Source of the DNA: Isurus oxyrinchus
Lineage: Eukaryota
Assembly: GCA_026770705.1 (NCBI GenBank)
Contig: JANJGN010000013.1
Location: forward strand, 130,572,001-130,636,000
Direction: 5' to 3'
Length of the DNA stretch: 64,000 nt
A program made the position numbers and the translations under genes. A model generated the notes under the pieces. The model made no database searches. It saw only the letters and a list, made by a program, of their open reading frames with translations, and was not told the DNA's origin. Positions 11,435 through 63,535 of the stretch are shown here, one piece after another (positions within the stretch are counted from its first letter, which is position 1; every line of letters starts with the position of its first letter).

Positions 11435-11520
11435 TGCTCTCTCCACAGACACTACATGATCTGCTCAGTGTTCCCAGCATTTTCTATTTCTATTTCAGAC
11501 ATCCAGCATCTGCAGGTTTT
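11435..11520 (+). mobile_element. Penelope-like element tail fragment
   Basis: ctctctccacagac...ctgctcagtgttcccagcattttctatttctatttcagacatccagcatctgcag matches the family tail. Confidence 0.6.
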
Positions 11521-14500
11521 TTAAATTTATTTTTTTGTAATTATTTTTACGTGAGCCACAAAACCTTTTCATATATTATTTTCTTTATAGATTGTGTCTT
11601 GTTTTAGACATGGCTATTACAAACCCTCAAAATAAGAGGTTGATTCGGAAGGTAGAATCTGTGGGTTAGGCAGTTGATCTTGAAGGTATTTCCCGAACAG
11701 CTATACATATCAGGAAATTTCCCAGAAGCATTGGCCTGCAAAACAGATGTGTCTACCAGATACATTAACAAGTAGCAGTTTGTCTGGAAATGAGGGAACA
11801 TTCATATATGTTCGGATGACAACAGAAAAAGGTTTTAATCTGCTGTTTACTTATGCGTGTGGCAGATTACGCTGAAGAATGAAATATTTTTCTTCATTTT
11901 GTCTTACTTGATTCCAGCACCACTGGGGTATAGGGAGAGAATGATCCCAGAATGACTCCTGATGTTCACAATCTTGCATTTTTTGCTTTGTTTAGTCTTC
12001 TTTTTTGAAATGCTTTCTAAAAACAAAAAGAAACGCATTGATAAATTTCTTAATTTCCATGAATTTTTGTCTTCAAAGAGTAGCGGAATATACGATGGTG
12101 GGCAATTGCCTCTTGTGTAAAACTGGCAGCATGCTTCTACCCATATGAAAATCTTTGTGTCCGTAGGAGTATAGCATTCCACTTATTCTCGTAGCATGGT
12201 ATTACCAATCAGATGCAAGAATAATATCCACAACAAATATCATTATAGTCCATACCAAAAGCTGATATTGGAAATTTGAATACATTAAACCACCTGAATA
12301 CATCTAACTTCCTATGTGCTAATGATTTATGTAAGTTAAAATAATTATACTCATTTCAAAATGGAAGTTCCAAGTAAAATGTTAATTCATTTAACATTAA
12401 GTCAAATTAGGGAGTCAAATTATGAGCAAATCCAGTCAGAGGCATCAACCACCCCGTGGCCTATTCAATTCTATTTTATAAATAATGTTGTCTCGAAGCA
12501 ATGTCAAGAGGTCAGCTAAATCTTTATGAGTTAAGAGTGCACTTTTTTCCCTAATTTTCTATTTTTTCCCAATACAATACAGACATTGAAAATTCAAGTT
12601 ATTATTTGAACTCAGCATTTAAATATTGTGAATAATGACAGGAAAATATTTTAAAAGTTGTTGGATTAGTATATTGCCTTCAATTTCCTAAACAATTCAT
12701 TGTTTAATTATCATCATCCAATTCCTTTTTTAAAAAAATCAAGTGGTAAGAAAATGATTATGTATGCAGTTCAAATATCCAGCTTAATCCTGATATTCTT
12801 TGAGCTAGGGTTCTGCATGCTAAAAATGCTGTACCTCTGAAGTCAAATGACTGAAAAGCATTAGCTTGACATTAAAATCTGATTTTTTTTTTCCTTTTTT
12901 AACAATTCTTGGTCTGGTTTATGCAATAAAGATTGAAGAAATTATCTGAAGTATTAGGCTTTCAGATGGTTATTAAGGCAATTTTAGGGACTAAATTTTC
13001 ATCAGGGGCTTGCTGTGTATTGCCTTCAATACATTCAATCTGTAACAAGCAAAGTGGATTTCTCAGTTGTTTGATTTGGAATTTCTCATGTATGATGATG
13101 ACATTCTGCGCATGTCAAATTCACAACTAACTGAAAATAAATGGCTCCAACTTAGAAACACTGCTAAGCCAATGCCTCTGATAACAGCACACTATTTTAA
13201 TAACAGTCAAAATAAATTTAAACAGTCAGAATTAAAGGATAATTTTTTTGTAGCCTTTCAATTTTTTTTGTAAAAGGCTTCAGATGAGTCTACCTGAAAA
13301 GTAAAGTGTATTCTACGACCATTTATTAGAGTCCTTTGTTAAAATTTGATGCATGTATAAGATTCTGGACTATTTAAAAACGAACTGAAATCGATAGAAA
13401 ATCTGGATAGGTTTTTAAAAATGACCCCGTGCAGTACTGCAGTGAAAATCCCCAGCTTTCAGCAGGAAGCTTAATGAAGAAGAAAGCCCATCAAATCTAT
13501 GAGTAGATGCAAAGTGTGCTGGATCCCGGCATTCGAATCCTGAGAGAGCTGTTATTGCGCACAGGCCATTGTGATTTCATTTCCTGCACTTTATTGCTTT
13601 ATTTTATAGGGGAATAAAATAGTCAAGTGTGATGTGTTTCAAACGCTGTGAATGATGGAGTGCCAAGGTGTATTATAATTAGCAGCATTGCCCAAACTGC
13701 AGCAGCATTAAGCAATAGATAAAGAATAATGCATACCTGGGACTCATTGTGAGGCAATGAATTACGCTGCAAACTGCAAAAAGTAAGTGGAGCTCCTCAT
13801 AATAAAAATCTTCCCAATGATGTTACATTACAGGCTTGGAAGCACTCCCTGGTATCCATGCATATTTTACTGACTTTTTTCAATGTAATTTTATTTTTGT
13901 TTTCATCCAAGCTCGTACATTTTTTAATTCACTTCAGCTTTTGGAGGCAGGTTCAATCGAGCCATTTCAGAAGGGAACTAAACTATCATCTGAAAAGGAA
14001 GAATGTGCAGGGTTACGGGGAGAAGGTGGGGAAATGGCATGAGGTGAATTGTTCATTCGGAGAGCCAGTGCAGTCACAGTGGCCCAGTGGCCTCCTACGC
14101 CATAACGATTCTGAGAGGCAAAGCATGGAAGTGATACTGCAGTAAAAGACCAGGTATTAAGTGATTGAGTAAGTTTTTGAATTCTGTGCTGTGGTAGCCT
14201 GAAAGTTGTTTTGCATATTTAAGTCAAGGTGTTTAAGGTTTAAAAAATAAATATTCTGATGACAAATTGTGGGGCAAGCGCTTTTTGCTGAACTCATCTC
14301 CTGAAGGCACTGGCAACCTCACAGTGCCCCAAGTAAGTTGCTATTCTTCTTTTGAGAGTTTAGGCGCTGAATGTCAACAGATTATTCAACCATGTGGCAG
14401 CACCGCAATTGAGCCTGTCTCAGCCAATTTTGCTTTCCAGTGATCGTTGCGGAATGCAGTAATCAGAAGCAGAAATCCTATCCAATTGTACCATCCTGCT

Positions 14501-16426
14501 GCAGTGTTTATTGAGATCTGCATGGCTCAGCTCATCACTTCTTTATACAGCTGGCCAATTGACTGAATCCCAACGAGGTTGTTTCTGAGAAGAATAACTG
14601 CAGTACGCACACATTCTACTTTGTTGTCAGCCTTTTCAAACAATTTGTTAATACTTGTCTGTCTTTAAAAAAAAAACAGGCTTCTTTTACTCCTACTACA
14701 TTTGGGTCTTGCTTTTCTTCTTCTTTTCGACAGGCCCTCTTTGCTGCTTGTGCATGACCCCTTGCAGCCATGGGGCAAGGAAGGCCATCTGCTTTTGACA
14801 GTGGCATTGGTAGAAAGCACCAGAAGGCAGTTACAAGTTTCCCTATTCCTAAACCTCTGGTTAGCGCTTCCTGAGATTGATAATTCAGCATAAGGAGAGT
14901 GAATGAGGCATTCTACCATGTGTGACTGCTCCACTGTATAATCTACGCATTTTCCATTTTTTAAAGGGTTAATTGGTTTCAGCCAATATATGGTAAACTA
15001 ACAGGTTCTGTTTTTTTTTCTCTCTGAACGTAAACATTATTATGATATTATTTTGACATGCTACAGCAGCAATGCACAGATTAGATTCCCCATAGTTAGA
15101 TTAAGAGCAGAAACGTTTGATTGAAATAGTCACATTTCCTAAATGGATCCAAAAGTCTGCACAGAATGCTTGATAAAACGTGATAGTGCAGAAGAATGGC
15201 CAGCCTGGGTGCCGGTTTCAGCTTTTAGTGATTGATTAGATTCAAGGTTCTTGACCTCTTTTTCTTGTGTAATTGGTGAAATGGCTACTACAAGAAAGGA
15301 AGGCTGATTTAGAGGTTTTGTCACACCCTAGACCTTAGCAACATCCTGATAATTGCATTTCAGACAGAACCTGTTTAATGCAATTAAGCTACTGATGCCT
15401 TTTTTTAAAGTTCGCACTGCCAATCAAATTATAGACGTTACAACAAGCTTTGTTTAACTGTAGTTTCCATCAGAGATGAATATGATTTCTGAGGGATGCC
15501 AATTGTGTTCAAATAATGAAATAATTTAGTCTGAGATTTTTTTCTATTTTTTACTCAGACTTTTCGTGGGTATGTACTCTTCCAATAACTATGCCTTAGT
15601 AGCTACTTAATCCAATTTAATAAAAAAAAATTTAACAGATTTGTATTTACAGACAGGCTGTAATTCTAAAAACAAAAATTAAAAATATTACTCCCCATAC
15701 TTTAAGTGGTTGAGAAACCGTTTCTCTTGGATGGGGTGAGCACATAATTTCACAGCTGCCTCTGATCCTGTAAACACGGACAGTTTCCAGTAAGAACCCA
15801 TTGGATCATGAGTGAGGAGTACTTGTAATTTTTAAAAATATAGCCCAGGAACATTGAAGCCACTCATTGTGTCCTAGCTATTATCAGAGTACAGAATGAA
15901 ACTGAAACCATCCTGATCTTTTTGGGTAACTAATTACAGCTTGTTTGAGCACAATGTCTTCATTAAGCTTTCCATGGAACTGTGATACATCTGCACACTT
16001 GTAAAACAGGAATTGGAGACAAAGCTACAAAATCTCTGCATGATTCTTACTGCATGGTGCCTTGATATCTTGGAGGGAGATATTCTTTTATTTTAGTATT
16101 CCAATCCTTTTGACCCTAGTCTGCATGACAAGAACAGTATGGTAAAAGATCGATTGGTGCTATCCACTCCATTCTTGAGATGTTCACTGCTGGAGTTCTC
16201 TCAATATTTAGTTAGAGAAAATTTCTGCTCACCCAGTACTGGATGTTGGGCCAGCAGTCTGAATTTAGAGGCAGTGCAGAGGTCAAAAGAGGCATACATT
16301 TTCTGGATAATTTCGCAGAGGGGCAGCATGTTGATGAGAAATCTGAGGTGGCCAATATAGATCTTGTAGGGACACCAGAGGTAATGATGCAGGAAGAGAA
16401 GCCATCACAGTTTAATCCCTCCACAT

Positions 16427-41800: not shown

Positions 41801-43661
41801 CCTGTCACCCTATTGTCACACTTGATTTTAATTGCCCGCCTTACTTCAAAACTTTTGCTTACAGTTGCCCTCAGTTTTCTGCTCTCCCCTACCTTCGCAA
41901 ACTTATAAATAATTATACAAATGGACCGACCCAGGAAATGTAATTACTATTCGCACTTCAACATTCTGACAGATCAACCCCAGTTTGTAACAATCTAAAC
42001 TAATTGACACTAGTAAACAAACATCAGGCCCATTTATTCTCTGCTGTTTGTACTCAATGATTACGGATGGATTTCTTGATCTGCGCTCTTGGCACCTCTT
42101 ACAATGTCTTTGTTATAAAAAGTTGTTAACGTATCTGTACTCTTGCCCTCTACCTGTTGTCTGCTGCTGACCCACTTTATAGTTTGTCCATTCAGTCCTT
42201 CAAGCCTATTGAGGACAATGCAGTTCATTCATCGCTGATCTGGATCTTAATCGCCATTTCCCCACTTTGGATTTATGTCCCTTAATACCCATGCCCTACA
42301 AAAAAATACTTATCAATCTGAGTCTTGAAATTTTTATTTGACCTGGCTTCTACAGATTTTACGGTGTTATGAAGGAAACTGGCCTATCTATATTTTTTTT
42401 ATCAGTTCTAGTGAAGAGTCTAATCCAAAATGATGGTCTGTGATTATTCCGTTTGGATCTGTGCACCAGCTTTGCCAAAACCGGTTTCCTTAACCTAAAA
42501 TCGGGGAACCCTAAAAATATGGGTGCACAATTCTACCACTGGAATAAGAAAAGCTTAATGACGATAGGTAGGCCAACTGTACATTTTCCGTGTTTTGTAT
42601 CAGAATTTCAGGTTTGCACTCTTTTTTTATCTCAGTTTTCATTTCCGACGTGAACAGCTAAAAGTTATCCTCATGGCTAACAACGAAATACAAGCACACT
42701 GAAATAAAGCTTTAAAAAATGGGTGTAAAATCAATTAATCCCAATCGTCTACCACCACTGCTCGCAACACTCCTGACCTAAAACGTGTTAAAATGTTAGA
42801 GTTTGAGTGTGGCCACACTGTTTTCCATAGAACTGGAAAATCATAAATCACAGCTTTTGATGGATTGGGAAGTTTTACAAATCATTGTTACTTTTCCCAA
42901 GTCATAGAGGTAATTTGAGAAGTGTTTGGCCAGTGTGGGAGTGAGGGGGGAAAAAAAAAGATGGCAGGAGTGGTGGGGCTATTGAAGCCACCCAGGCTAT
43001 TGAAGTAATCAAAGACTTAATGCCAGCCAGAGCCTCTATCTTTGTCTCCTCATGGTTTGATCTACAGCACCAAACAATCATTTTGGGCTAAACCTATGTA
43101 TGCATTACAAATCATGTTAATTTCTTAGACTTAATGCTGCAGTTAATTCAGAAAGCACTACTTTTTTTATATGAATTTGTGACCACGCTACCATATTGGC
43201 ACCCATTCAAAATGTTAATTTGATAAACCATGATCAAGTTCCTGAATGGAAACTGTTGCCCCAGTCAAAATTTATGATTTTGGCATGGTCAAAACCACAT
43301 CACACATGGGATTTTAATGTGCTTTAAAATTACAGTGTCACAAATAATCATTCTAAGTGCAGTATCATATTCAAACACCCTATTGCGAATAGAAATTAGA
43401 CTCAGCCTCAATAAACCAGCACGTTTAAAATCACTACCCTTTTAGGCTAAAACATAAGTTTTCAACCTGAGAACATTGTGGGTTTGCTTTATTTTTGGAT
43501 AAGGATTCAATCTTTTTTTCCCTACCTGGTTGGCTTCAATAGCCCCTCCACTCCTGCCATCGTCTTTTTTTTTCCTCTCCCCCTCACCCCCACACTGGCC
43601 AAACACTTCTCAAATTAACCCTTTGAATTGGGAAAAGTAACAATGATCTGTAAAACTTCCC

Positions 43662-44040
43662 CAAAAATGAAAGCAAAAAACCGCGGATGCTGGAAATCCA
43701 AAACAAAAACAAAAATACCTGGAGAAACTCAGCAGGTCTGACAGCATCTGCAGAGAGGAACACAGTTAACGTTTCGATTCCATATGACTCTTCAACAGAG
43801 CTAATGAAAAATAGAAAAGAGGTGAAACATAAGCTGGTTTAAGGGGTGTGGGGTGGTGGAGCAGGTAGAGCTGGATAGAGGGCCAGTGCTAGGTGGAGAT
43901 AACCAAAAGACATCGTAGACAAAAGAGCAAAGAGGTGTTGAAGGTGGTGATATTATCTAAGGAATATGATAATAGGTGACATTAAGGGCAGAAAGCAGGA
44001 CGAGCAAGGTACAGATAGCCCTAGTGGGGGTGGGGTGGGG
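43662..44040 (-). mobile_element. 5'-truncated Penelope-like element end with 13-bp TSD
   Basis: TSD TGTAAAACTTCCC at 43649-43661 and 44041-44053; contains the family tail and a hammerhead-like motif. Confidence 0.85.
43764..43802 (-). ncRNA. Minimal type-I hammerhead ribozyme-like motif (variant core CUGUUGA)
   Basis: Minus strand AGCU-CUGUUGA-A-GAGUC-AUAUG-GAAUC-GAAAC-GUU-AACU; one mismatch each in helix I and helix II. Confidence 0.5.
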
Positions 44041-49000: not shown

Positions 49001-49425
49001 ATAGCTGACTACTGACTTGTTTATGAATCATGGTGCTATGTTGTCCCTGAACCATTCCAAGTATATACACTTTATAAGAATGCCATTGATTTGGGGTGCA
49101 CTTAAACCGCAGAATTATAGATAGCCATTCACAGAATGTGCTTTATGAGAGGTGTTCCTCATTTGCAATTATCTAATGAACTCTCTACTTGCTCCAATAG
49201 CTCAGTGCTATGTGCCAGGAAGGTACAATCCCTGCTCTGTTTTGAGTTGACCAGACTAGACAAATTATCAGCACCATTGCTACCACCGATCTCTAACCAG
49301 ACCCTCTCCCACACTTCATAGTATGTATATGTGGTTGCCATATGATTCCTGATCTGGCTCAGCAGTTATTTAACTTGCCCCCTGCCTGTCCCCACACACA
49401 TTTGCAAAGGCATACTAACATTAGC

Positions 49426-49612
49426 AAAAGTAGCTGGAAAAACTCAGCAGGTCTGTCGGCATCTGCGGAGAGGAACACAGTAGACATTTCGAGTCATGTG
49501 GACTCGAAACGTCTACTGTGTTCCTCTCCGCAGATGCTGTCAGACCTGCTGAGTTTTTCCAGCTATTTTTGTTTTTGTTTCAGATTTCTAGCATCCGCAG
49601 TATTTTGCTTTT
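49426..49612. mobile_element. Fold-back (palindromic) Penelope-like end
   Basis: 49431-49495 is the reverse complement of 49501-49565 (3 mismatches), loop ATGTG; tail continues to ~49612. Confidence 0.85.
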
Positions 49613-51495: not shown

Positions 51496-53546
51496 ATTTT
51501 TGAGCCCTTGTCTTCAATCTGCAACATAAGTGATCTAAATGCCATAGAAAAGAAATAAACTTCCATTGCCGATCAGCTATTGTTATACCACATGTACCAG
51601 TTTGGGCTTGGTTCCTCCTTGGAGTGGCAGCATAGCAGGCATGATCGATTGTTGTAACTCCTGCATCTGCCCTGGACCAAGGAAAATTGCAGCTCACACA
51701 TGTGCAAGTGTTACTCACTAATTGGTTAAAAGTTTCAAGTTAACAAAAACAACCGAGACTTTGCTAAATTTGAAAAGAAAAGAAGTTAAGTTTGAAAAAT
51801 GTTGATCTTGCATCAATTGTCTCTGTTTTATTTGGGAAACTTTCACATTAATTATATTATTACAGCCTGTATCAAAATTGCTTTGTGTCAACAGGAAACA
51901 ATATGAACACAGGAATATTGGATGGACACTCCCAGACTTCCTGCACTGATCCCCAATGATAAATCAGATAATTTGCTATGTTGTGAAGACCATCATATAC
52001 AATGAAATAATTCAGCTGCTAAAACAAAGCTGTGATCTTTTAGTGACACCAAGTCTAATTAACAGTATGTAAACATTAGGCATTGTGAGGATGTAATTGT
52101 TTTTCAGGTTTTCAGTTCACAACTTTTTTTAAAACTGTTTTAGCAAGGTCACTCAGTAGTTACAGATAATCTGGCTCCTTTGTCAAATTACGACCTGTGG
52201 TTCTTAAAACTTTTCTTTTTGAAGTGTGATTGAAATTTGAAAGTGCCACTTGCAAAATGACAATCAGAAAGTGTATTTTTAAATTGTTTATCAAATGTAT
52301 AAAGCATGTTTTATTGCATTGAAAATTGTATACTATGAGTTGAATATAGTATTGAGTTGACTCAGCTGCTAAACCTTTAACTCTTGCTCCACAGGCTGTG
52401 GGATCAAGGCCCACACCAGGAATTGAGCACATGGTCTAGGCTGATATTCCAGGATTGACACAGGTGCTGTCCTTCAGATATAAAACTGATGTCCCGGTCA
52501 GATGGGGTTAAAAAGACATGTCATGTAATGTAATGTAACATGTAATGAAAATATATCTGGTTTGATATACTTGAAAGACTGAGATATTAATAGGCCCAAA
52601 GCACCTTCTTCATTTGAACATACCTTCTGATCTCAATTTTGTCATCAATGCTGTTTCGGGGAGGGAAATATTTTTAAATTGTATGCACTTGTGTAGTTTG
52701 AATGTGGACCCATTAGAAAGTGGATTGATGATGCCCAATTTGCACCTCACTTAAGACCCTTGCAGCTGAAGAGACTTCCAACCAATCAGTGTATGTTGGA
52801 TTCAAATCCAAATTCCAGAGTTTAAAATACCACATGCAAATTTATCATGCCACTCAAACCTTTAATGTTTGACATTTCTATTGCTTGCGTGCCAAACATT
52901 TTTAAGAGCTAATACTTTAGAACTCTAAATGCCTTCATAATTACTGTACATGATGCACACAGCTTTAATCTGCAGCATTTTAATCACCTAAATTAAGAAT
53001 TGTAATTAACAGCTCCAACACTCCCCTGGAAAAGAGCCATGGTGCAAGTTCCACAACATCTAAATATATTAACTACTAAGTTCCTCATTAATTACTGTAT
53101 GTAAATTATGAGTTCTCCATTTTCATGGTTTGTCTGTCATGACATCTGTGCCACAAATATAACTTTGTACCTTTAAAGGTAGGAAAACATCCCAGGTCAC
53201 TTCACAGGAACATAATAAGTTCGCACCAAGTCAAAGAAGGAGATGTTAGGATAGGTGACCACTGTTGTTTTAAGAGAAGTCTTAAATGAGGAGAAATGGA
53301 TGAAGAGAGATGGAAAGGTTTTGGGAGGAAATTTGGGAATTTATAGCCTTGACGGTGAATGATTGCCAATGATAATTTGAAGGAAGTGGGGGCGACAGAC
53401 TAAAGAGTTGGAGGAACACAGAGTTTTTGGAGGGTTGCAGGATAGGAGGAGAGATAGGGAAGGGTGAGGCCATGTAAGATTTTAAACACAAGGATAAGAA
53501 TTTTAAAATTGAAGCGTTGGAGGACCAGGAACAAGTATAGATCAGC

Positions 53547-53902
53547 AAAACAAAAACAGAATTACCTGGAAAATCTCAGCAGGTCTGGCAGCATCGGCGG
53601 AGAAGAAAAAAGTTGACGTTTCGAGTCCTCATGACCCTTTGACAGAACTGAATTTGATTTGGTTGACCACACTATCCACTTCCATTGTCCCATTGAGTGG
53701 GACTGCCTTTGCCTCATTCCACTCTTAATTATCCAGTCATAGCCTAAGAATCTCCTGAAGTTCTGTCGAAGGGTCATGAGGACTCGAAACGTCAACTCTT
53801 TTCTTCTCCGCCGATGCTGCCAGACCTGCTGAGTTTTTCCAGGTAATTCTGTTTTTGTTTTGGATTTCCAGCATCCGCAGTTTTTTTTTGTTTTTTTGTT
53901 TT
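53547..53902. mobile_element. Composite insertion: inverted PLE end + 110-bp captured local DNA + PLE end, 14-bp TSD
   Basis: TSD TATAGATCAGCAAA at 53536-53549 and 53903-53916; arms 53547-53649 and 53759-53861 differ at 3 sites; 53652-53761 is the exact reverse complement of 54556-54665. Confidence 0.93.
53759..53797 (+). ncRNA. Minimal type-I hammerhead ribozyme-like motif (variant core CUGUCGA)
   Basis: AGUU-CUGUCGA-A-GGGUC-AUGAG-GACUC-GAAAC-GUC^AACU: 4-bp helix I, 5-bp helix II, loopless palindromic helix III (ACGU), GUC cleavage triplet. Confidence 0.65.
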
Positions 53903-55079
53903 TATAGATCAGCAAACACCGGTGAGACAGGTGATCAGGACTTAGAATATGGGCAACATAGTTTTGGAATAGCACAGGTTTATGTAGGGAGGGAGATGGG
54001 AGGGTATCCAGGAGAACATCATTAATAGGATTCATATCTGGAGGCAACTAAATCATGGATGAGGTTTTCAGTAATAGATAAGCTGAGGCAGGGGCAGAGA
54101 TGAGTGATGTACGGAGGTGAAAGTAGTCGATCTTTGTGATTCAGAGGATATGGGATTGGAAGCTCAGCTCAGGGTCAGATAGGATGACAAGGTTGTGAAT
54201 AGTCAAGTTCAACCTAAGACAATGGCCAAAGAGGGTTGGAATCAGTGCAAGGGAACAGAGTTTGTGGAAGGGGCTGAAGATAATGACTTTGGTCTTGCCA
54301 ATGTTTAATTGGAGTAAATTACAGCTCATCCAGAATGGGATGTTGGACAAGTAATCTGATAAAACAGAGGCAGTGGAGGCTTCGAGAGAGATGGTTGTGA
54401 GGGGGAACTGTGTGTCATCAGTGCACATGTGAAACCTAATGTCATGACTTCAAAGATATTGCCGAGGTACAGCATGTCAGTGAGGAACAGGAGCAGGATA
54501 AAGATTGATCCTTTCAGGAGTCCGGGTGTAGCAGTGCAGGACAGTAAGAGAAGCCACTTCAGGAGATTCTTAGGCTATGACTGGATAATTAAGAGTGGAA
54601 TGAGGCAAAGGCAGTCCCACTCAATGGGACAATGGAAGTGGATAGTGTGGTCAACCAAATCAAATGCTGCAGAGAGTTCAGAAATATGCACCGTGGTTGC
54701 AGTCACAGAGGAACTCATTTGTGACTTTGATTAGAGTAATTTTCAGTACTGTAGCAGGAGCAAAAACCTGATAATTGAAGAGATAATTGATAATTCCTGT
54801 GGGAAGGATGGACTCGGATTTTGGAGGCAACACAGTCAAGGGCCTTTGGAAAAGGAGATTAGGGATGGGAGAGTGGGGTGCAAGGAGAGAGGGGGTCCAG
54901 GGTAGTCCTTTGAGGAGGGGGTTGTTGATGGAAAATTTTGAAGTGTGGGGGGGACAGCTCCTTAGGAGAGGGAAGAATTCCAAATCAGCTATCATAGGTC
55001 CCAGGAAAGGATGTTGGATGCCAAGGATTTTGAACTTTTTGAACACAGACTTTTTGGTGCCTGTCCATAAGGAAGACTA

Positions 55080-55420
55080 AGTAAGGCTTATGGGCCAGTA
55101 ACTGTCAGAGTTATAGGGAACAATTTTTCCTTCCAGCAGAGAAATCCAGTGTACAGGGATATAATAAAATTAGGAAGTGATTCCAGGAATAATTATTACA
55201 CGTAAAGAATAGTCAGGATGTGGCATGCACGTAAGGCCACAGATTCAGAATCAATTGAGGTGTTTAAAAGTACAGATAGATACCTGAAAATAAGGGAGTT
55301 AAAAGCTTGAAGAAAAGATAGAAAATTGGGTCTAAGTAGCTAAAATGGATAAAGCTTTAAAAAAAATTAGCAGGGACAGTTTGCCGGATAAATGACCTAT
55401 ACCTGTTCCTGTGTGAGTTA
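55080..55420 (+). mobile_element. Old CR1 3' fragment
   Basis: Degenerate gaatagtcaggatgtggcatgcac...gccggataaatgacctatacctgttcc. Confidence 0.5.
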
Positions 55421-55729: not shown

Positions 55730-57100
55730 TCAGAATTTTTTAAGATGGAGGAATTTTAATGCAGGCTTGAAAATGTTCAAATTGAGGCATTGTTAATCAA
55801 TGTAACCAATGTAGGTCAGTGAGCACATTGGAGTGAGGGAGGGTGGGGTGGATGGAGACAGGGCGATGATGGGTGAAAGTGACTTGGTGCAAGTTAGGGT
55901 GCAGGCGGCAGAAATTTGGAAGAGCTCAAGTTTGTGCAGGGTGGAAGTTTGGAGGCTGACCAGGAGAGCCAAGATTTGGCAAGTCCAGAGGTAACAAAAT
56001 TATGGTTGAGCACCAGATAAGATGTTGTAGGGGGCAGAGTTATACAAAGTTATAGAGGTGGAAGCTGGCTTTCTTGCTAACAGAGTGGATATGTAGTCAG
56101 AAGCTTATCTTGGTGTCAAATGCAACACCAACATTATGAACTGTTGAGTTCAGTCTCAGAGAGTCACCATGGAGAGTGTTAGATCTAATAGCTAGGGGAC
56201 AGTTTGTCGCAGAGACTGAAGAAAATGGCTTCAGTCTTCCCAGTACTTAGTTGGAGGAAACCTCTGCTCATCCAGTACCGGATGTCAGATGAGCAGTCTG
56301 ACAAAACAGAGGAGGAGTCAGGAAATGGTGATGAGGTAGAACTGGGTGTTGTCAGTATACACGAAGCTGACATGTTTTTTGGATGATGTTGTCAAGGGGC
56401 AGCATATAGATAAGAAATAGGAGGGTGTCAATAATAGTTTCTTGGGGATTTTGGAAGTAGCTGTGCTTGAGCAGGAAGAGAAACCATTGCGTGTGGCTGT
56501 CTGGTTATGGCTGGATAGATAAACATGGAACCAGTAAGTGCATTCCCAATAAACTACTGGATGATACAGGAAAGGCATTGGAGGAAGATAGTGTGGTCCA
56601 CTCAGCTCGAGGAAGGCGGGAAAGCAGCAAAGGCAGCTGAACAGATGCCCTCAGTCTCATTAACAAATTCTCAGTAATAAAGAAGTCCAGGAACTCCACG
56701 CACTTGTTGGAAGTGAGTTTGGAGGAGGTGGGGGAGTGGGGTTATTAATGGAGAAGAGAAGCCCAAAGTCATCTTTGTATTCCAGAATGATCCTGGAACA
56801 GTGAACAGTTTTGGAAGAGGATATCAGGATCTGATTGTGCTTTATGTGTTTCAGCCAGATCTGCACTGAATGGCAAAACCAGTGGTCAACACTCATGTCT
56901 GTAGCCCTTGAATTTAAGGAAGTAGAGATGAGGGCCACACCAGGCTAATGACAAGGGCGGGAGAGTATAATGGCTTTAATAAAGACAAGGGCATCAAAGG
57001 CAAAACTGAAGATGTGATTGGGCAGATTGGTAACTGGAGAAATGGTCACAATGATTGGAGAGACAAAAGCTAGACACTCAGTTTATTTTAAAGTGCAGTT
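55730..57100 (-). mobile_element. L2 LINE fragment
   Basis: Minus strand VLSDCSSDIRYWMSRGFLQLSTGKTEAIFF; YTDNTQFYL; WFHVYLS. Confidence 0.8.
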
Positions 57101-62549: not shown

Positions 62550-63535
62550 GGGTCACTAACTCTGGTTGGATGTACTCCTGGAGGTTTCATAACACAAATT
62601 CCTGTCTTTAACGTGCACTGCCCCCACCATTGGTCTCCCACATAACCAACACCCTTCCGTGTCAACTGGATGGCAAACTGGCTCTCACTCAACAGATTTG
62701 GGTTATCCTTGACGGTCAGTCAAACTACCTTTTTAACACATCTGCAATATTTTTACAACTAAGAAATGAAAGTGTTCAAAGAAAATTAAATTAGATTTTT
62801 TTTTAATGTCCCTACGTTCAGCATCTTTAATTCTTGGGGATTCCAGGACAACCCTGGAGAGTTAGCAAATGGGGACCTTTGCAAATATTCACACATTCCC
62901 AGGAAGGGGCCTTTATCATAGATTGTGAAAGGCAAGGTTAATTAACTAAGGGACTTTGTCACTGTGACAGAAACCATTTATTTTTTGTGTACAGCAATAG
63001 AAATAAGTCAACAAATATAGAAATCTGAGCACTTTGTAGATCTACTGGCATCTGGGAGTATAAAAACATATGCCTTACTACAATAGGAGCTCTGATGAAA
63101 GGCCATCGACTTGAAACGTTAACTCTTGTTTCACTCTCCACAGGTGCTGCCTGGCCTGCTGGAGATCTCCAGCATTTTCTGATTTTATTTCAGTTTTCAG
63201 CATTTTGCTTTTGGGTTAATTTGGGTTGACTGGAGTCTCCAGGAATTTAAGACGTTGCTGCGAGCAGCCCAGGAAAGAATTATACGGGCAACAATTATTT
63301 TTTATTTTCTTTGAGCTGTCTTGTCTATTTGTTATAAAGATAGCAGATATGGAATGCAGGGCTGCTTGACCGACAGTCTGGAATCATCCAATCAGGTAAG
63401 AAAGAGTCCAATTCACTTTCCAATTGGAGTGGGGACCATGAGGTTTGACATGTTAGGTAAGCAATCATGGGATTGTGGGGGAGGGCCAATCAATTAATGG
63501 CACAGCCAGGATTATGTCCAGCCAGAATTGGTACC
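62550..63535. mobile_element. Two oppositely oriented old copies of a MITE-like repeat (62550-62870 and 63222-63535)
   Basis: Degenerate reverse complementarity (tctttaattcttggggattccag / ctggagtctccaggaatttaaga; gacggtcagtcaaactacc / gctgcttgaccgacagtc). Confidence 0.5.
63087..63125 (+). ncRNA. Minimal hammerhead ribozyme-like motif (canonical CUGAUGA core) in a PLE end extending to ~63215
   Basis: GAGCU-CUGAUGA-A-AGGCC-AUC-GACUU-GAAAC-GUU-AACUC followed by the family tail. Confidence 0.6.

What the first reader, a model, noticed from the sequence alone, without database searches (positions are those of the whole stretch)
53536..54665. Hammerhead-bearing Penelope insertion that captured a perfect inverted copy of neighbouring genomic DNA
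Seen: TSD (TATAGATCAGCAAA) - inverted PLE end (53547-53649) - 110 bp identical to the reverse complement of 54556-54665 - sense PLE end with T-rich tail (53759-53902) - TSD. Both arms stop at essentially the same point, the 5' strand of hammerhead helix I (AGTT), and the right junction has 3-nt microhomology (AGT). The source is an old, decayed L2, so 110/110 identity means it was copied from this locus, not from another L2. Known: PLEs carry minimal hammerheads and often insert with inverted termini. Inference: within one insertion event the nascent strand switched from the PLE template to DNA ~0.65 kb from the target site, then switched again to make the inverted arm. The product is a hairpin-flanked cassette of host sequence that resembles a MITE but arose by retrotransposition.
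Basis: partly seen in the sequence, partly recalled or inferred. Interest (0 to 1): 0.85.

Follow-up and report, generated by a model that had tools for sequence, protein, structure and literature searches.

The report
Penelope-type insertion with copied neighbouring DNA
A small retrotransposon landed here as two back-to-back copies and, while being stitched into the chromosome, picked up a perfect 110-letter inverted copy of DNA lying 0.64 kb away; it is a clean but not unprecedented by-product of retrotransposon integration.

Summary
One 14-bp target-site duplication (53536-49, 53903-16) encloses two inverted 104-nt copies of a very abundant short retroelement (101 of 104 letters pair), a one-sided 40-nt tail, and a 110-nt spacer that is the exact reverse complement of 54556-54665.

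The arms, tail and duplication are the published standard layout of Penelope-like insertions. Only the spacer is unusual.

Best reading (0.62): one integration event. Both target strands primed cDNA at two start sites 40 nt apart, and both cDNAs ran to the RNA 5' end. One 3' end then copied 110 nt of local sequence through 3-nt homology before end-joining. The template was either its own resected flank DNA or a local minus-strand transcript.

Later repair of a palindrome cannot be excluded (0.2).

Contig data favour the insertion being absent from a sister species about 1.1% diverged. The spacer also matches the window's own version of the source, not the sister's.

Rfam finds no hammerhead, and the motif's core is non-canonical. 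The MITE comparison is not supported.

LINE-1 insertions with sequence templated from nearby DNA, and rotifer Penelope captures, are already in print. This scan also noted the same phenomenon on other pieces of this genome (s1-871673, s1-897434, s1-898322), which I did not check.

The parts
53536..53549 (.). left copy of the 14-bp target-site duplication
   Evidence: Identical to 53903-53916. Its last 4 nt (CAAA) are also the first 4 nt of the inverted arm.
53546..53649 (-). inverted arm: antisense copy of element positions 1-104, without the tail
   Evidence: 101 of 104 complementary to 53759-53862.
53650..53651 (.). two letters (GA) between the left arm and the spacer. They may be untemplated, or 2 further nt of the element.
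   Evidence: They match neither the source nor the right arm. Their complement equals the last two letters of the weak consensus of read contigs upstream of 53759 (table 7, agreement about 0.4).
53652..53761 (+). spacer: exact inverted copy of 54556-54665
   Evidence: 110 of 110 letters, with identity ending at both borders. The last 3 nt (AGT) are shared with the right arm.
53759..53862 (+). sense arm, starting at the recurrent 5' end of the element (hammerhead-like head)
   Evidence: The older copy at 63088 starts at the same element position.
53863..53902 (+). one-sided 40-nt T-rich tail
   Evidence: Present only at the right arm. It matches the 30-40-bp one-sided tail described for Penelope-like insertions.
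53903..53916 (.). right copy of the target-site duplication
54556..54665 (-). source of the spacer, inside a decayed reverse-transcriptase-like repeat on the minus strand (about 54141-55046)
   Evidence: A contig of run X1 breaks exactly at 54665, while contigs of organism B run through it (table 8).
49417..49606 (.). second head-to-head pair of the same family in the window. It has no spacer, its axis lies in the helix-II-like hairpin, and its tail is again one-sided.

Best explanation
A short non-autonomous Penelope-like unit (104 nt, or 144 nt with its tail) was inserted once at a break staggered by 14 bp.

Step 1. Both target 3' ends primed reverse transcription on element RNA.
- The bottom strand started at the distal site. 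This gave the sense arm with the 40-nt tail.
- The top strand started 40 nt further in, paired through 4 nt (CAAA). This gave the inverted arm without a tail.

Step 2. Both cDNAs ran to the 5' end of the RNA. This is why the arms stop at the same element position.

Step 3. The two 3' ends are identical, not complementary, so they cannot anneal to each other.
- The 3' end of the tailed arm's cDNA paired through 3 nt with local sequence 0.64 kb away. The template was most simply the bottom strand of its own flank, exposed by 5' resection (a fold-back). The alternative is a local minus-strand transcript.
- It copied 110 nt and was then joined to the other cDNA without homology.

Step 4. Fill-in synthesis completed the unit.

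Shown: the anatomy, the local origin of the spacer, the microhomologies, and the recurrence of head-to-head pairs.
Inferred: the order of events, which end did the copying, and whether the template was DNA or RNA.
For: - One perfect 14-bp TSD encloses everything.
- The spacer matches the source 110 of 110, while other relatives of the source repeat are 71-75% identical.
- There is 3-nt homology at the spacer/right-arm junction, 4-nt homology at the TSD/left-arm junction, and none at the left-arm/spacer junction.
- The source lies on the side to which the tailed arm's cDNA is attached, and the copy is inverted. Fold-back copying predicts both.
- The arms end at a recurrent 5' end of the family.
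  - The copy at 63088 starts at the same element position.
  - Many read contigs diverge at 53758/53759 (table 7).
- All 15 joints shown, of 407, link the left arm to the right arm. Run X1 shows 13 of the 15 and at least one organism-B run shows 10 of the 15 (table 5). Head-to-head pairs are therefore a routine product of this family.
- The fillers shown in other pairs are 1-7 nt (12 shown of 260, table 5c).
- The second pair in the window has the same one-sided tail.
- Literature on Penelope-like elements:
  - An inverted 5'-truncated copy plus a 30-40-bp tail at one end is typical (PMC8557442).
  - A purified Penelope-like protein cleaves and extends both strands and starts at two adjacent internal sites that delimit the tail (PMC11167929).
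- Timing:
  - The spacer shares the window's version of the source, which lacks 14 letters that organism B has behind 54632 (table 4).
  - The word share of 0.61 in organism B fits absence of the insertion (predicted 0.57-0.67) better than presence (0.71-0.78).
Against: - The arms differ at 3 of 104 positions while spacer and source differ at 0 of 110. If both pairs have the same age and rate, P(0 of 110) is 0.04; Fisher's exact test gives p = 0.11 (data). The spacer could therefore be younger than the arms. Alternatively the arms came from two different RNAs or from an error-prone polymerase.
- The 238 nt on the 5' side of the 43.6-kb copy shows that some members extend beyond the supposed RNA 5' end.
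- No read spanning the whole unit was seen. The listed contigs of run X1 do not cover the spacer junctions, and the X1 contig does not break at the other source border, 54556 (table 8).
- The empty site in organism B was not seen directly.
- Transcription of the source could not be tested, so DNA versus RNA template stays open.
- Penelope membership rests on layout only. No RT or endonuclease gene of that kind was found in the window.
Confidence: 0.62

Rival explanations
1. Two steps. An ordinary head-to-head insertion with abutting arms formed first. Later the near-perfect 208-bp palindrome broke at its centre, and the break was repaired with a templated insertion copied from 0.64 kb away.
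For: - Abutting full-length pairs exist elsewhere in the genome (joint 53649 to 53758, table 5).
- The arms show 3 differences in 104 nt against 0 in 110 for spacer and source, as if the spacer were younger.
- Templated inverted insertions at breaks through fold-back are reported in yeast (PMC11724301; only the start of its abstract was seen, in the listing).
Against: - Neither arm is eroded at the centre. Both reach the family's recurrent 5' end to within 2 nt, whereas breaks in palindromes usually remove central sequence (recalled knowledge).
- The difference in divergence is not significant (p = 0.11).
- Scan notes describe local inverted copies also at single-arm insertions (s1-898322; not checked by me). 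A palindrome break would not explain those.
Confidence: 0.2
2. One nascent strand copied the element RNA, switched to local DNA, then switched again and copied its own first cDNA to make the inverted arm.
For: - It yields the same final order of segments.
- The 4-nt homology at the left TSD junction could equally serve to anneal the finished strand to the target overhang.
- Self-priming has been proposed for Penelope inverted repeats (PMC3846280).
Against: - Arms copied from each other would be identical at birth, but they differ at 3 of 104 positions in an insertion that looks young.
- The outer end of the inverted arm falls at about the same internal position in 2 of 2 pairs in the window. 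It also matches the published one-sided tail, which is explained by two defined start sites.
Confidence: 0.1
3. Assembly artefact. The spacer, or the whole fold-back, was created by misassembly of a hairpin-forming repeat.
For: - Published work warns that complex Penelope structures cause assembly problems (PMC8557442).
- No spanning read was seen.
Against: - A perfect TSD, defined microhomologies and the canonical one-sided tail are not what a misjoin produces.
- In run X1 a contig ends exactly at 54665 and the next begins 30 nt before it. This is the branch expected if that 30-mer has a second neighbour, as in the spacer. Organism B contigs do not branch there (table 8). However, X1 may be the sample from which the window was assembled.
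Confidence: 0.04

Closest known systems
Canonical Penelope-like insertion unit: an inverted 5'-truncated copy next to the sense copy, a 30-40-bp tail at one end, and a TSD of variable length. Sources: PMC8557442, PMC3846280, PMC11167929 (passages read for the first two, whole main text for the third).
   Same: Inverted arms, a 40-nt one-sided tail, a 14-bp TSD and a hammerhead-type motif in the repeated end.
   Different: The unit holds only the terminal 104/144 nt and no ORF. The arms are separated by 110 nt of locally copied host sequence instead of abutting or overlapping.
Rotifer (Adineta vaga) Penelope captures: host genes or unrelated sequences between pLTRs (pseudo-LTRs, the element's terminal repeats) inside a TSD, spacers of captured host DNA, and a 304-bp piece repeated in inverted orientation upstream of a pLTR (PMC3846280; abstract and passages).
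   Same: Foreign sequence framed by Penelope ends within one TSD.
   Different: The rotifer cases were read as mobilisation in trans of a composite. In the passages I read, the origin of the captured DNA is not described as local. Here the source lies 0.64 kb away, is inverted and is 100% identical, so the composite formed at this site.
[quoted passage not shown]
   Same: Priming from both ends of the break, microhomology at the junctions, a preserved TSD of 12-18 bp, and locally templated filler.
   Different: - A different retroelement class and a different enzyme (a GIY-YIG endonuclease plus a telomerase-like RT, per the literature).
- In LINE-1 twin priming (recalled from the original description, not read here) the two segments come from different parts of one RNA. 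Here both arms copy the same 104 nt.
LINE-1 chimeras made by RT template switching to other RNAs, such as U6 or mRNA (PMC13174262, passages).
   Same: An extra segment fused to the 5' end of the element in the orientation expected for a switch at the RNA 5' end. This is the RNA-template variant of my explanation.
   Different: Those partners are abundant RNAs from distant loci. Here the partner is single-copy repeat debris from the same locus.
MITE (miniature inverted-repeat transposable element)
   Same: Overall shape: terminal inverted repeats, a TSD, small size and a strong hairpin.
   Different: - The arms are retroelement ends with one asymmetric tail.
- The cassette occurs once. The spacer has only itself and its source in the window. 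Summed read depth in the spacer bin is close to that of unique sequence (35 against 27-29 in X1).

Membership tests
Penelope-like element (PLE) insertion | Inverted 5'-truncated copy adjacent to the sense copy, forming inverted repeats around the unit | tested here: met
   Arms of 104 nt, 101 of 104 complementary. Definition taken from PMC8557442.
Penelope-like element (PLE) insertion | Extension (tail) of 30-40 bp at only one end | tested here: met
   A 40-nt tail at 53863-53902, absent from the left arm. The pair at 49.4 kb shows the same asymmetry.
Penelope-like element (PLE) insertion | Target-site duplication flanking the whole unit | tested here: met
   14 of 14 letters.
Penelope-like element (PLE) insertion | Link to an ORF with a PLE-type reverse transcriptase and a GIY-YIG endonuclease | tested here: inconclusive
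   - The window has 4 ORFs of at least 140 aa.
- 3 of them were scanned against Pfam and matched no family.
- The fourth runs across the insertion itself and was not scanned.
- No autonomous copy with this end was available, so membership rests on layout.
Penelope-like element (PLE) insertion | Hammerhead motif in the repeated end | tested here: inconclusive
   - Read by eye, the head has the minimal hammerhead layout described in PMC4209133: a short helix I, an extra nucleotide after the core, a G-C closing pair of helix II, GAAA, and a palindromic CG in place of helix III.
- The core reads CUGUCGA (right arm) or CUGUCAA (left arm) instead of CUGANGA.
- An older copy at 63088 has CUGAUGA.
Hammerhead ribozyme families of Rfam | Score at or above the family's gathering threshold | tested here: not met
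   - No match in the whole window at gathering thresholds.
- No hammerhead match in 53500-53950 even at E up to 10.
- The only notable hit there, MIR837 at 35.3 bits against a threshold of 117, merely reflects the long hairpin.
LINE-1-type twin priming | Inverted and sense segments inside one TSD, with microhomology where the second primer annealed | tested here: met
   A 4-nt overlap (CAAA) between the TSD and the inverted arm.
LINE-1-type twin priming | The two segments derive from different, adjoining parts of one RNA | tested here: not met
   Both arms copy the same 104 nt. The feature itself is recalled from the original description, which I did not read here.
MITE | Many copies of the same cassette, mobilised as DNA | tested here: not met
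   - The spacer has 2 places in the window, itself and its source.
- Summed contig depth in the spacer bin is 35.2 in X1 against 27-29 in unique flanks.
- The one-sided tail also breaks the symmetry expected of terminal inverted repeats.
Retro-insertion with filler templated from nearby genomic sequence | Extra sequence inside the TSD that is identical to DNA near the integration site | tested here: met
   110 of 110 letters, with the source 639-749 bp beyond the right TSD copy. The kind is described for LINE-1 (PMC11702581).

The most novel reading that the evidence does not exclude
In this genome, integration of Penelope-like elements regularly resolves its two run-off cDNA ends by fold-back copying of the resected flank. 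One very abundant element family would then be a steady source of local inverted duplications from 0.1 to several kb, each framed by hairpin-forming ends. Their junctions would record the still unknown late steps of Penelope integration.
Probability: 0.3. Interest if true: 0.6.

Novelty: new variant of a known kind. Interest (0 to 1): 0.4.

Why it matters
The late steps of Penelope-like integration (second-strand handling and joining of the two ends) are not known; the one in vitro study I read says so.

A young insertion with intact junctions and a traceable, locally copied filler is a natural record of those steps.
- It shows both ends reaching the same RNA terminus.
- It shows one junction with 3-nt homology and one with none.
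- It shows a template within resection range, on the side of the tailed arm.

If the other cases noted in this genome hold up, a survey of them could separate DNA fold-back from RNA template switching. It could also show how much local inverted duplication this element class creates in a vertebrate genome.

As a single case it is a tidy example, not a new principle.

Tried and rejected
- Rfam: nothing at gathering thresholds on the whole window. At E up to 10 on 53500-53950 there was no hammerhead. The MIR837, IS009 and CrcZ hits are a hairpin or low-complexity artefacts.
- Pfam on six ORF pieces around the source and the left flank: no family at E up to 1.
  - The 'L2' label therefore rests on atlas hits of 0.93-0.95 to clusters in which 10% of members carry RVT_1.
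  - It also rests on RT-like motifs that I recognised by eye and from recall.
  - I ran no further search on this.
- Homology between the left flank (52500-53535) and the right flank, which might have guided the copying: no match.
- Search for an autonomous Penelope gene in the window: none among the 3 ORFs of at least 140 aa that I scanned.
- Empty site in organism B: not seen directly.
  - Table 5 shows only 15 of 407 joints, and all 15 come from the repeat family.
  - I fell back on the word share and on contig break points. Both are indirect.
- Trans-splicing of a local transcript onto the element: rejected by eye, because no acceptor or donor dinucleotides fit the spacer borders.
- A second lay of reads, and a search for RNA runs to test minus-strand transcription, were not possible. 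Both caps (one call each) were used.
- Literature searches for locally templated filler in Penelope insertions gave no paper whose title or abstract treats it.
  - four terms, 5 papers.
  - three terms, 1 paper.
  - two terms, 6 papers.
  - The library lacks many subscription journals, and supplements were closed. Figs S9/S10 of PMC11702581 and the supplements of PMC11167929 may bear on the comparison.
- The organism was not identified. Run tables give coded names, and an earlier scan note calls it a shark, which I did not check.
Full report
WHAT IS THERE

- A 14-bp direct repeat lies at 53536-53549 and 53903-53916, 14 of 14 letters.
- Two inverted arms lie at 53546-53649 and 53759-53862. They are 104 nt long and 101 of 104 letters are complementary.
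- The spacer at 53652-53761 is the exact reverse complement of 54556-54665, 110 of 110 letters.

A script adds detail.
- Identity between spacer and source ends abruptly on both sides.
- The spacer and the right arm share 3 nt (AGT, 53759-61).
- The left arm shares its first 4 nt (CAAA) with the target duplication.
- Two letters (GA, 53650-51) lie between the left arm and the spacer.
- The right arm alone continues into a 40-nt T-rich tail (53863-53902).
- The three arm differences are one at a CpG, one C/T and one T/A. The spacer has no CpG.

The 110 nt occur only twice in the window. As single-stranded DNA the unit is a near-perfect hairpin: -129.7 kcal/mol against -33.1 +/- 3.5 for shuffles.

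THE ELEMENT

BLAST inside the window finds these other copies:
- a copy at 43663-43802 on the minus strand;
- a second head-to-head pair at 49417-49606;
- an older copy at 63088-63203;
- a weak one at 11440-11538.

The copy at 63088 and both arms here start at the same element position. This is the first letters of a hammerhead-like head.

Read by eye, that head has the minimal hammerhead layout described for Penelope-like elements (PMC4209133, passages). The young copies read CUGUCGA, CUGUCAA or CUGUUGA where the core should be CUGANGA. Only the old copy at 63088 has CUGAUGA.

Rfam reports no hammerhead at gathering thresholds, nor at E up to 10 in the local stretch. 'Hammerhead-derived' is fair; 'hammerhead-bearing' is not shown.

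No Penelope-type gene was found among the 3 scanned ORFs of at least 140 aa. The Penelope label therefore rests on layout.

THE LAYOUT IS THE STANDARD ONE

- Craig et al. (PMC8557442, passages) state that Penelope-like insertions often carry an inverted 5'-truncated copy at the 5' end, and a 30-40-bp tail at only one end of the unit.
- Arkhipova et al. (PMC3846280, abstract and passages) describe the same layout in a rotifer, with TSDs of 8-10 bp and a 31-bp tail.
- Frangieh et al. (PMC11167929, whole main text) report two things about a purified Penelope-like protein. [quoted passage not shown] Reverse transcription starts at two adjacent internal sites in the RNA, and the sequence between them is the tail.

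The present unit fits this. One arm ends at the distal site with the tail. The other ends 40 nt further in.

The pair at 49.4 kb shows the same asymmetry. Its axis lies in the helix-II-like hairpin and it has no spacer.

READS

One search listed 24 runs, of which 20 hold the stretch.
- Four runs of organism A (one sample) hold 0.92-0.96 of the sampled words.
- Sixteen runs of organism B (six studies) hold less. Thirteen of them hold exactly 0.61, and the other three hold 0.58, 0.40 and 0.24.

I laid contigs of X1 (organism A) and of X5, X8 and X17 (organism B, three studies) on 53000-55200.

Abundance and head-to-head pairs:
- Summed contig depth over the arms is 10^5 to 10^6 times that of the unique flanks, so the family is extremely abundant in both organisms. 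The tool warns that this figure is not a copy number.
- All 15 joints shown, of 407, link the left arm (53572-53649) to the right arm (53757-53837).
- Thirteen of the 15 fall within the last 15 nt of the left arm and the first 17 nt of the right arm.
- X1 shows 13 of the 15 rows, and at least one organism-B run shows 10 of the 15.
- The sides of these joints are short (18-27 letters), so the rows describe other copies of the family, not this locus.
- They show that head-to-head pairs joined near the element's 5' end are a routine product.
- The fillers shown are 1-7 nt (12 shown of 260).

At the locus itself:
- An X1 contig ends exactly at 54665, and the next one begins 30 nt before it. This is the branch expected if that 30-mer has a second neighbour, as it has in the spacer.
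- The three organism-B contigs run through 54665 unbroken.
- The X1 contig does not break at the other border, 54556. I can explain this only by graph simplification, so I list it as evidence against.
- No listed contig spans the spacer junctions.

AGE

- Organism B differs from the window by 20 substitutions in 1782 aligned letters, or 1.1% (X17 rows, counted).
- B has 14 extra letters behind 54632, inside the source. The window and the spacer both lack them (table 4).
- The extra letters are flanked by a 4-nt direct repeat. Read by eye, they keep the RT-like frame going. B is therefore probably ancestral, and the spacer was copied after a deletion in A's lineage. This polarity rests on my reading and on recalled RT motifs.
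- A simulation predicts these word shares in B:
  - 0.78 if the insertion is present and identical;
  - 0.71 if it is present with four extra substitutions;
  - 0.57-0.67 if it is absent.
- The observed share is 0.61, with a standard error of about 0.04 on 166 sampled words. Absence is favoured but not proven. Even the runs of organism A reach only 0.92-0.96.

THE SOURCE

- On the minus strand, 54141-55046 carries pieces with RT-like motifs.
- The atlas places the 95-aa piece next to clusters in which 10% of members have RVT_1, at scores of 0.93-0.95.
- Pfam sees nothing in any of the six pieces.
- Relatives of this repeat in the window are 71-75% identical, so it is old.
- The clade (L2) was not tested.

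MECHANISM

With the tailed arm in sense on the + strand, its cDNA is the minus strand, primed by the bottom strand of the right flank.

After reaching the 5' end of the RNA this cDNA ends in ...ACT-3'. The next letters it carries are those of the + strand from 54556 to 54665. Its template therefore had the minus-strand sequence of that stretch. That template is one of two things:
- the bottom strand of the very flank to which the cDNA is attached, which would be exposed if the top strand was resected by at least 750 nt;
- a transcript made from a minus-strand gene or from the old repeat.

A fold-back on the resected flank explains four facts at once: the proximity, the inversion, the side, and the 3-nt homology. 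An RNA template explains the orientation only by chance. I favour DNA at about 60:40 within the single-event reading.

The far end of the copied piece meets the other arm with no homology and perhaps two added letters, as in non-homologous joining.

The need for a bridge follows from the geometry. Two cDNAs that both ran to the same RNA end are identical, not complementary.

For LINE-1, fold-back of a cDNA end onto a hyper-resected flank is described in a preprint (PMC11702581, passages). [quoted passage not shown]

RIVALS

A later break in the palindrome repaired with a templated insertion.
- For: it would explain why the arms differ at 3 of 104 positions while spacer and source differ at 0 of 110. 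P(0) is 0.04 at the arm rate; Fisher's test gives p = 0.11.
- Against: the arm centres are not eroded.
- Against: the arm differences can also come from two template RNAs. If the insertion is younger than the A-B split, only about 1.2 differences would be expected from later mutation (P of 3 or more = 0.11).

- Against: it predicts arms identical at birth.
- Against: it predicts no fixed outer end for the untailed arm.

An assembly artefact.
- Against: the TSD, the microhomologies and the branch at 54665 make it unlikely.

EARLIER NOTES OF THIS SCAN (not checked by me)

- Three other pieces of this genome carry local inverted copies tied to Penelope insertions.
  - s1-871673: 3.1 kb. This note was followed up and judged real, with a pointer to rotifers.
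  - s1-897434: 406 bp.
  - s1-898322: 327 bp.
- Note s1-864202 judged the head-to-head layout with a one-sided tail to be textbook.
- I followed the rotifer pointer. The paper (PMC3846280) reports unrelated sequences captured between pLTRs (pseudo-LTRs, the element's terminal repeats) inside TSDs, spacers of captured host DNA, and a 304-bp piece repeated in inverted orientation. In the passages I read it does not say that the captured DNA was local.

VERDICT

The arms, tail and TSD are ordinary for this element class. The locally copied spacer is a variant of a known by-product of retro-integration. It has been documented for LINE-1, is hinted at for rotifer Penelope elements, and has already been noted elsewhere in this genome by the scan. 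Its value is as a well-preserved, datable specimen for working out how Penelope-like insertions are completed.

Noticed in passing
window 43662-44040 (minus strand), with the paralogous empty target at 42770-42928: Another insertion of the same family, bounded by a 13-14-bp target duplication. The duplication is visible because an uninterrupted paralogue of the target lies 0.8 kb away. The insertion holds one sense copy plus 238 nt on its 5' side that match nothing else in the window. That extra sequence is either a longer part of the element or a non-local capture.
   Followed up: partly
window 49417-49606: A second head-to-head pair of the family. It has no spacer, its axis lies in the helix-II-like hairpin, and the inverted arm again stops short of the tail. 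The target duplication is short (about 6 bp, judged by eye).
   Followed up: partly
window 63088-63203: An older, diverged copy that starts at the same element position and has the canonical hammerhead core CUGAUGA. The three younger copies have U at core position 6.
   Followed up: partly
window 54632 (inside the source): Organism B has 14 extra letters here, in all three runs laid. They are flanked by a 4-nt direct repeat. This is probably a microhomology-mediated deletion in the window's lineage.
   Followed up: partly
window 53506 and 54153-54172: Contigs of both organisms break at the same two places in the flanks, which implies short repeated words there. Summed depth rises to thousands in 53444-53517.
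   Followed up: no
window 56191-56356 and 16202-16279: Further decayed copies of the same RT-like repeat as the source, 71-75% identical to it.
   Followed up: no
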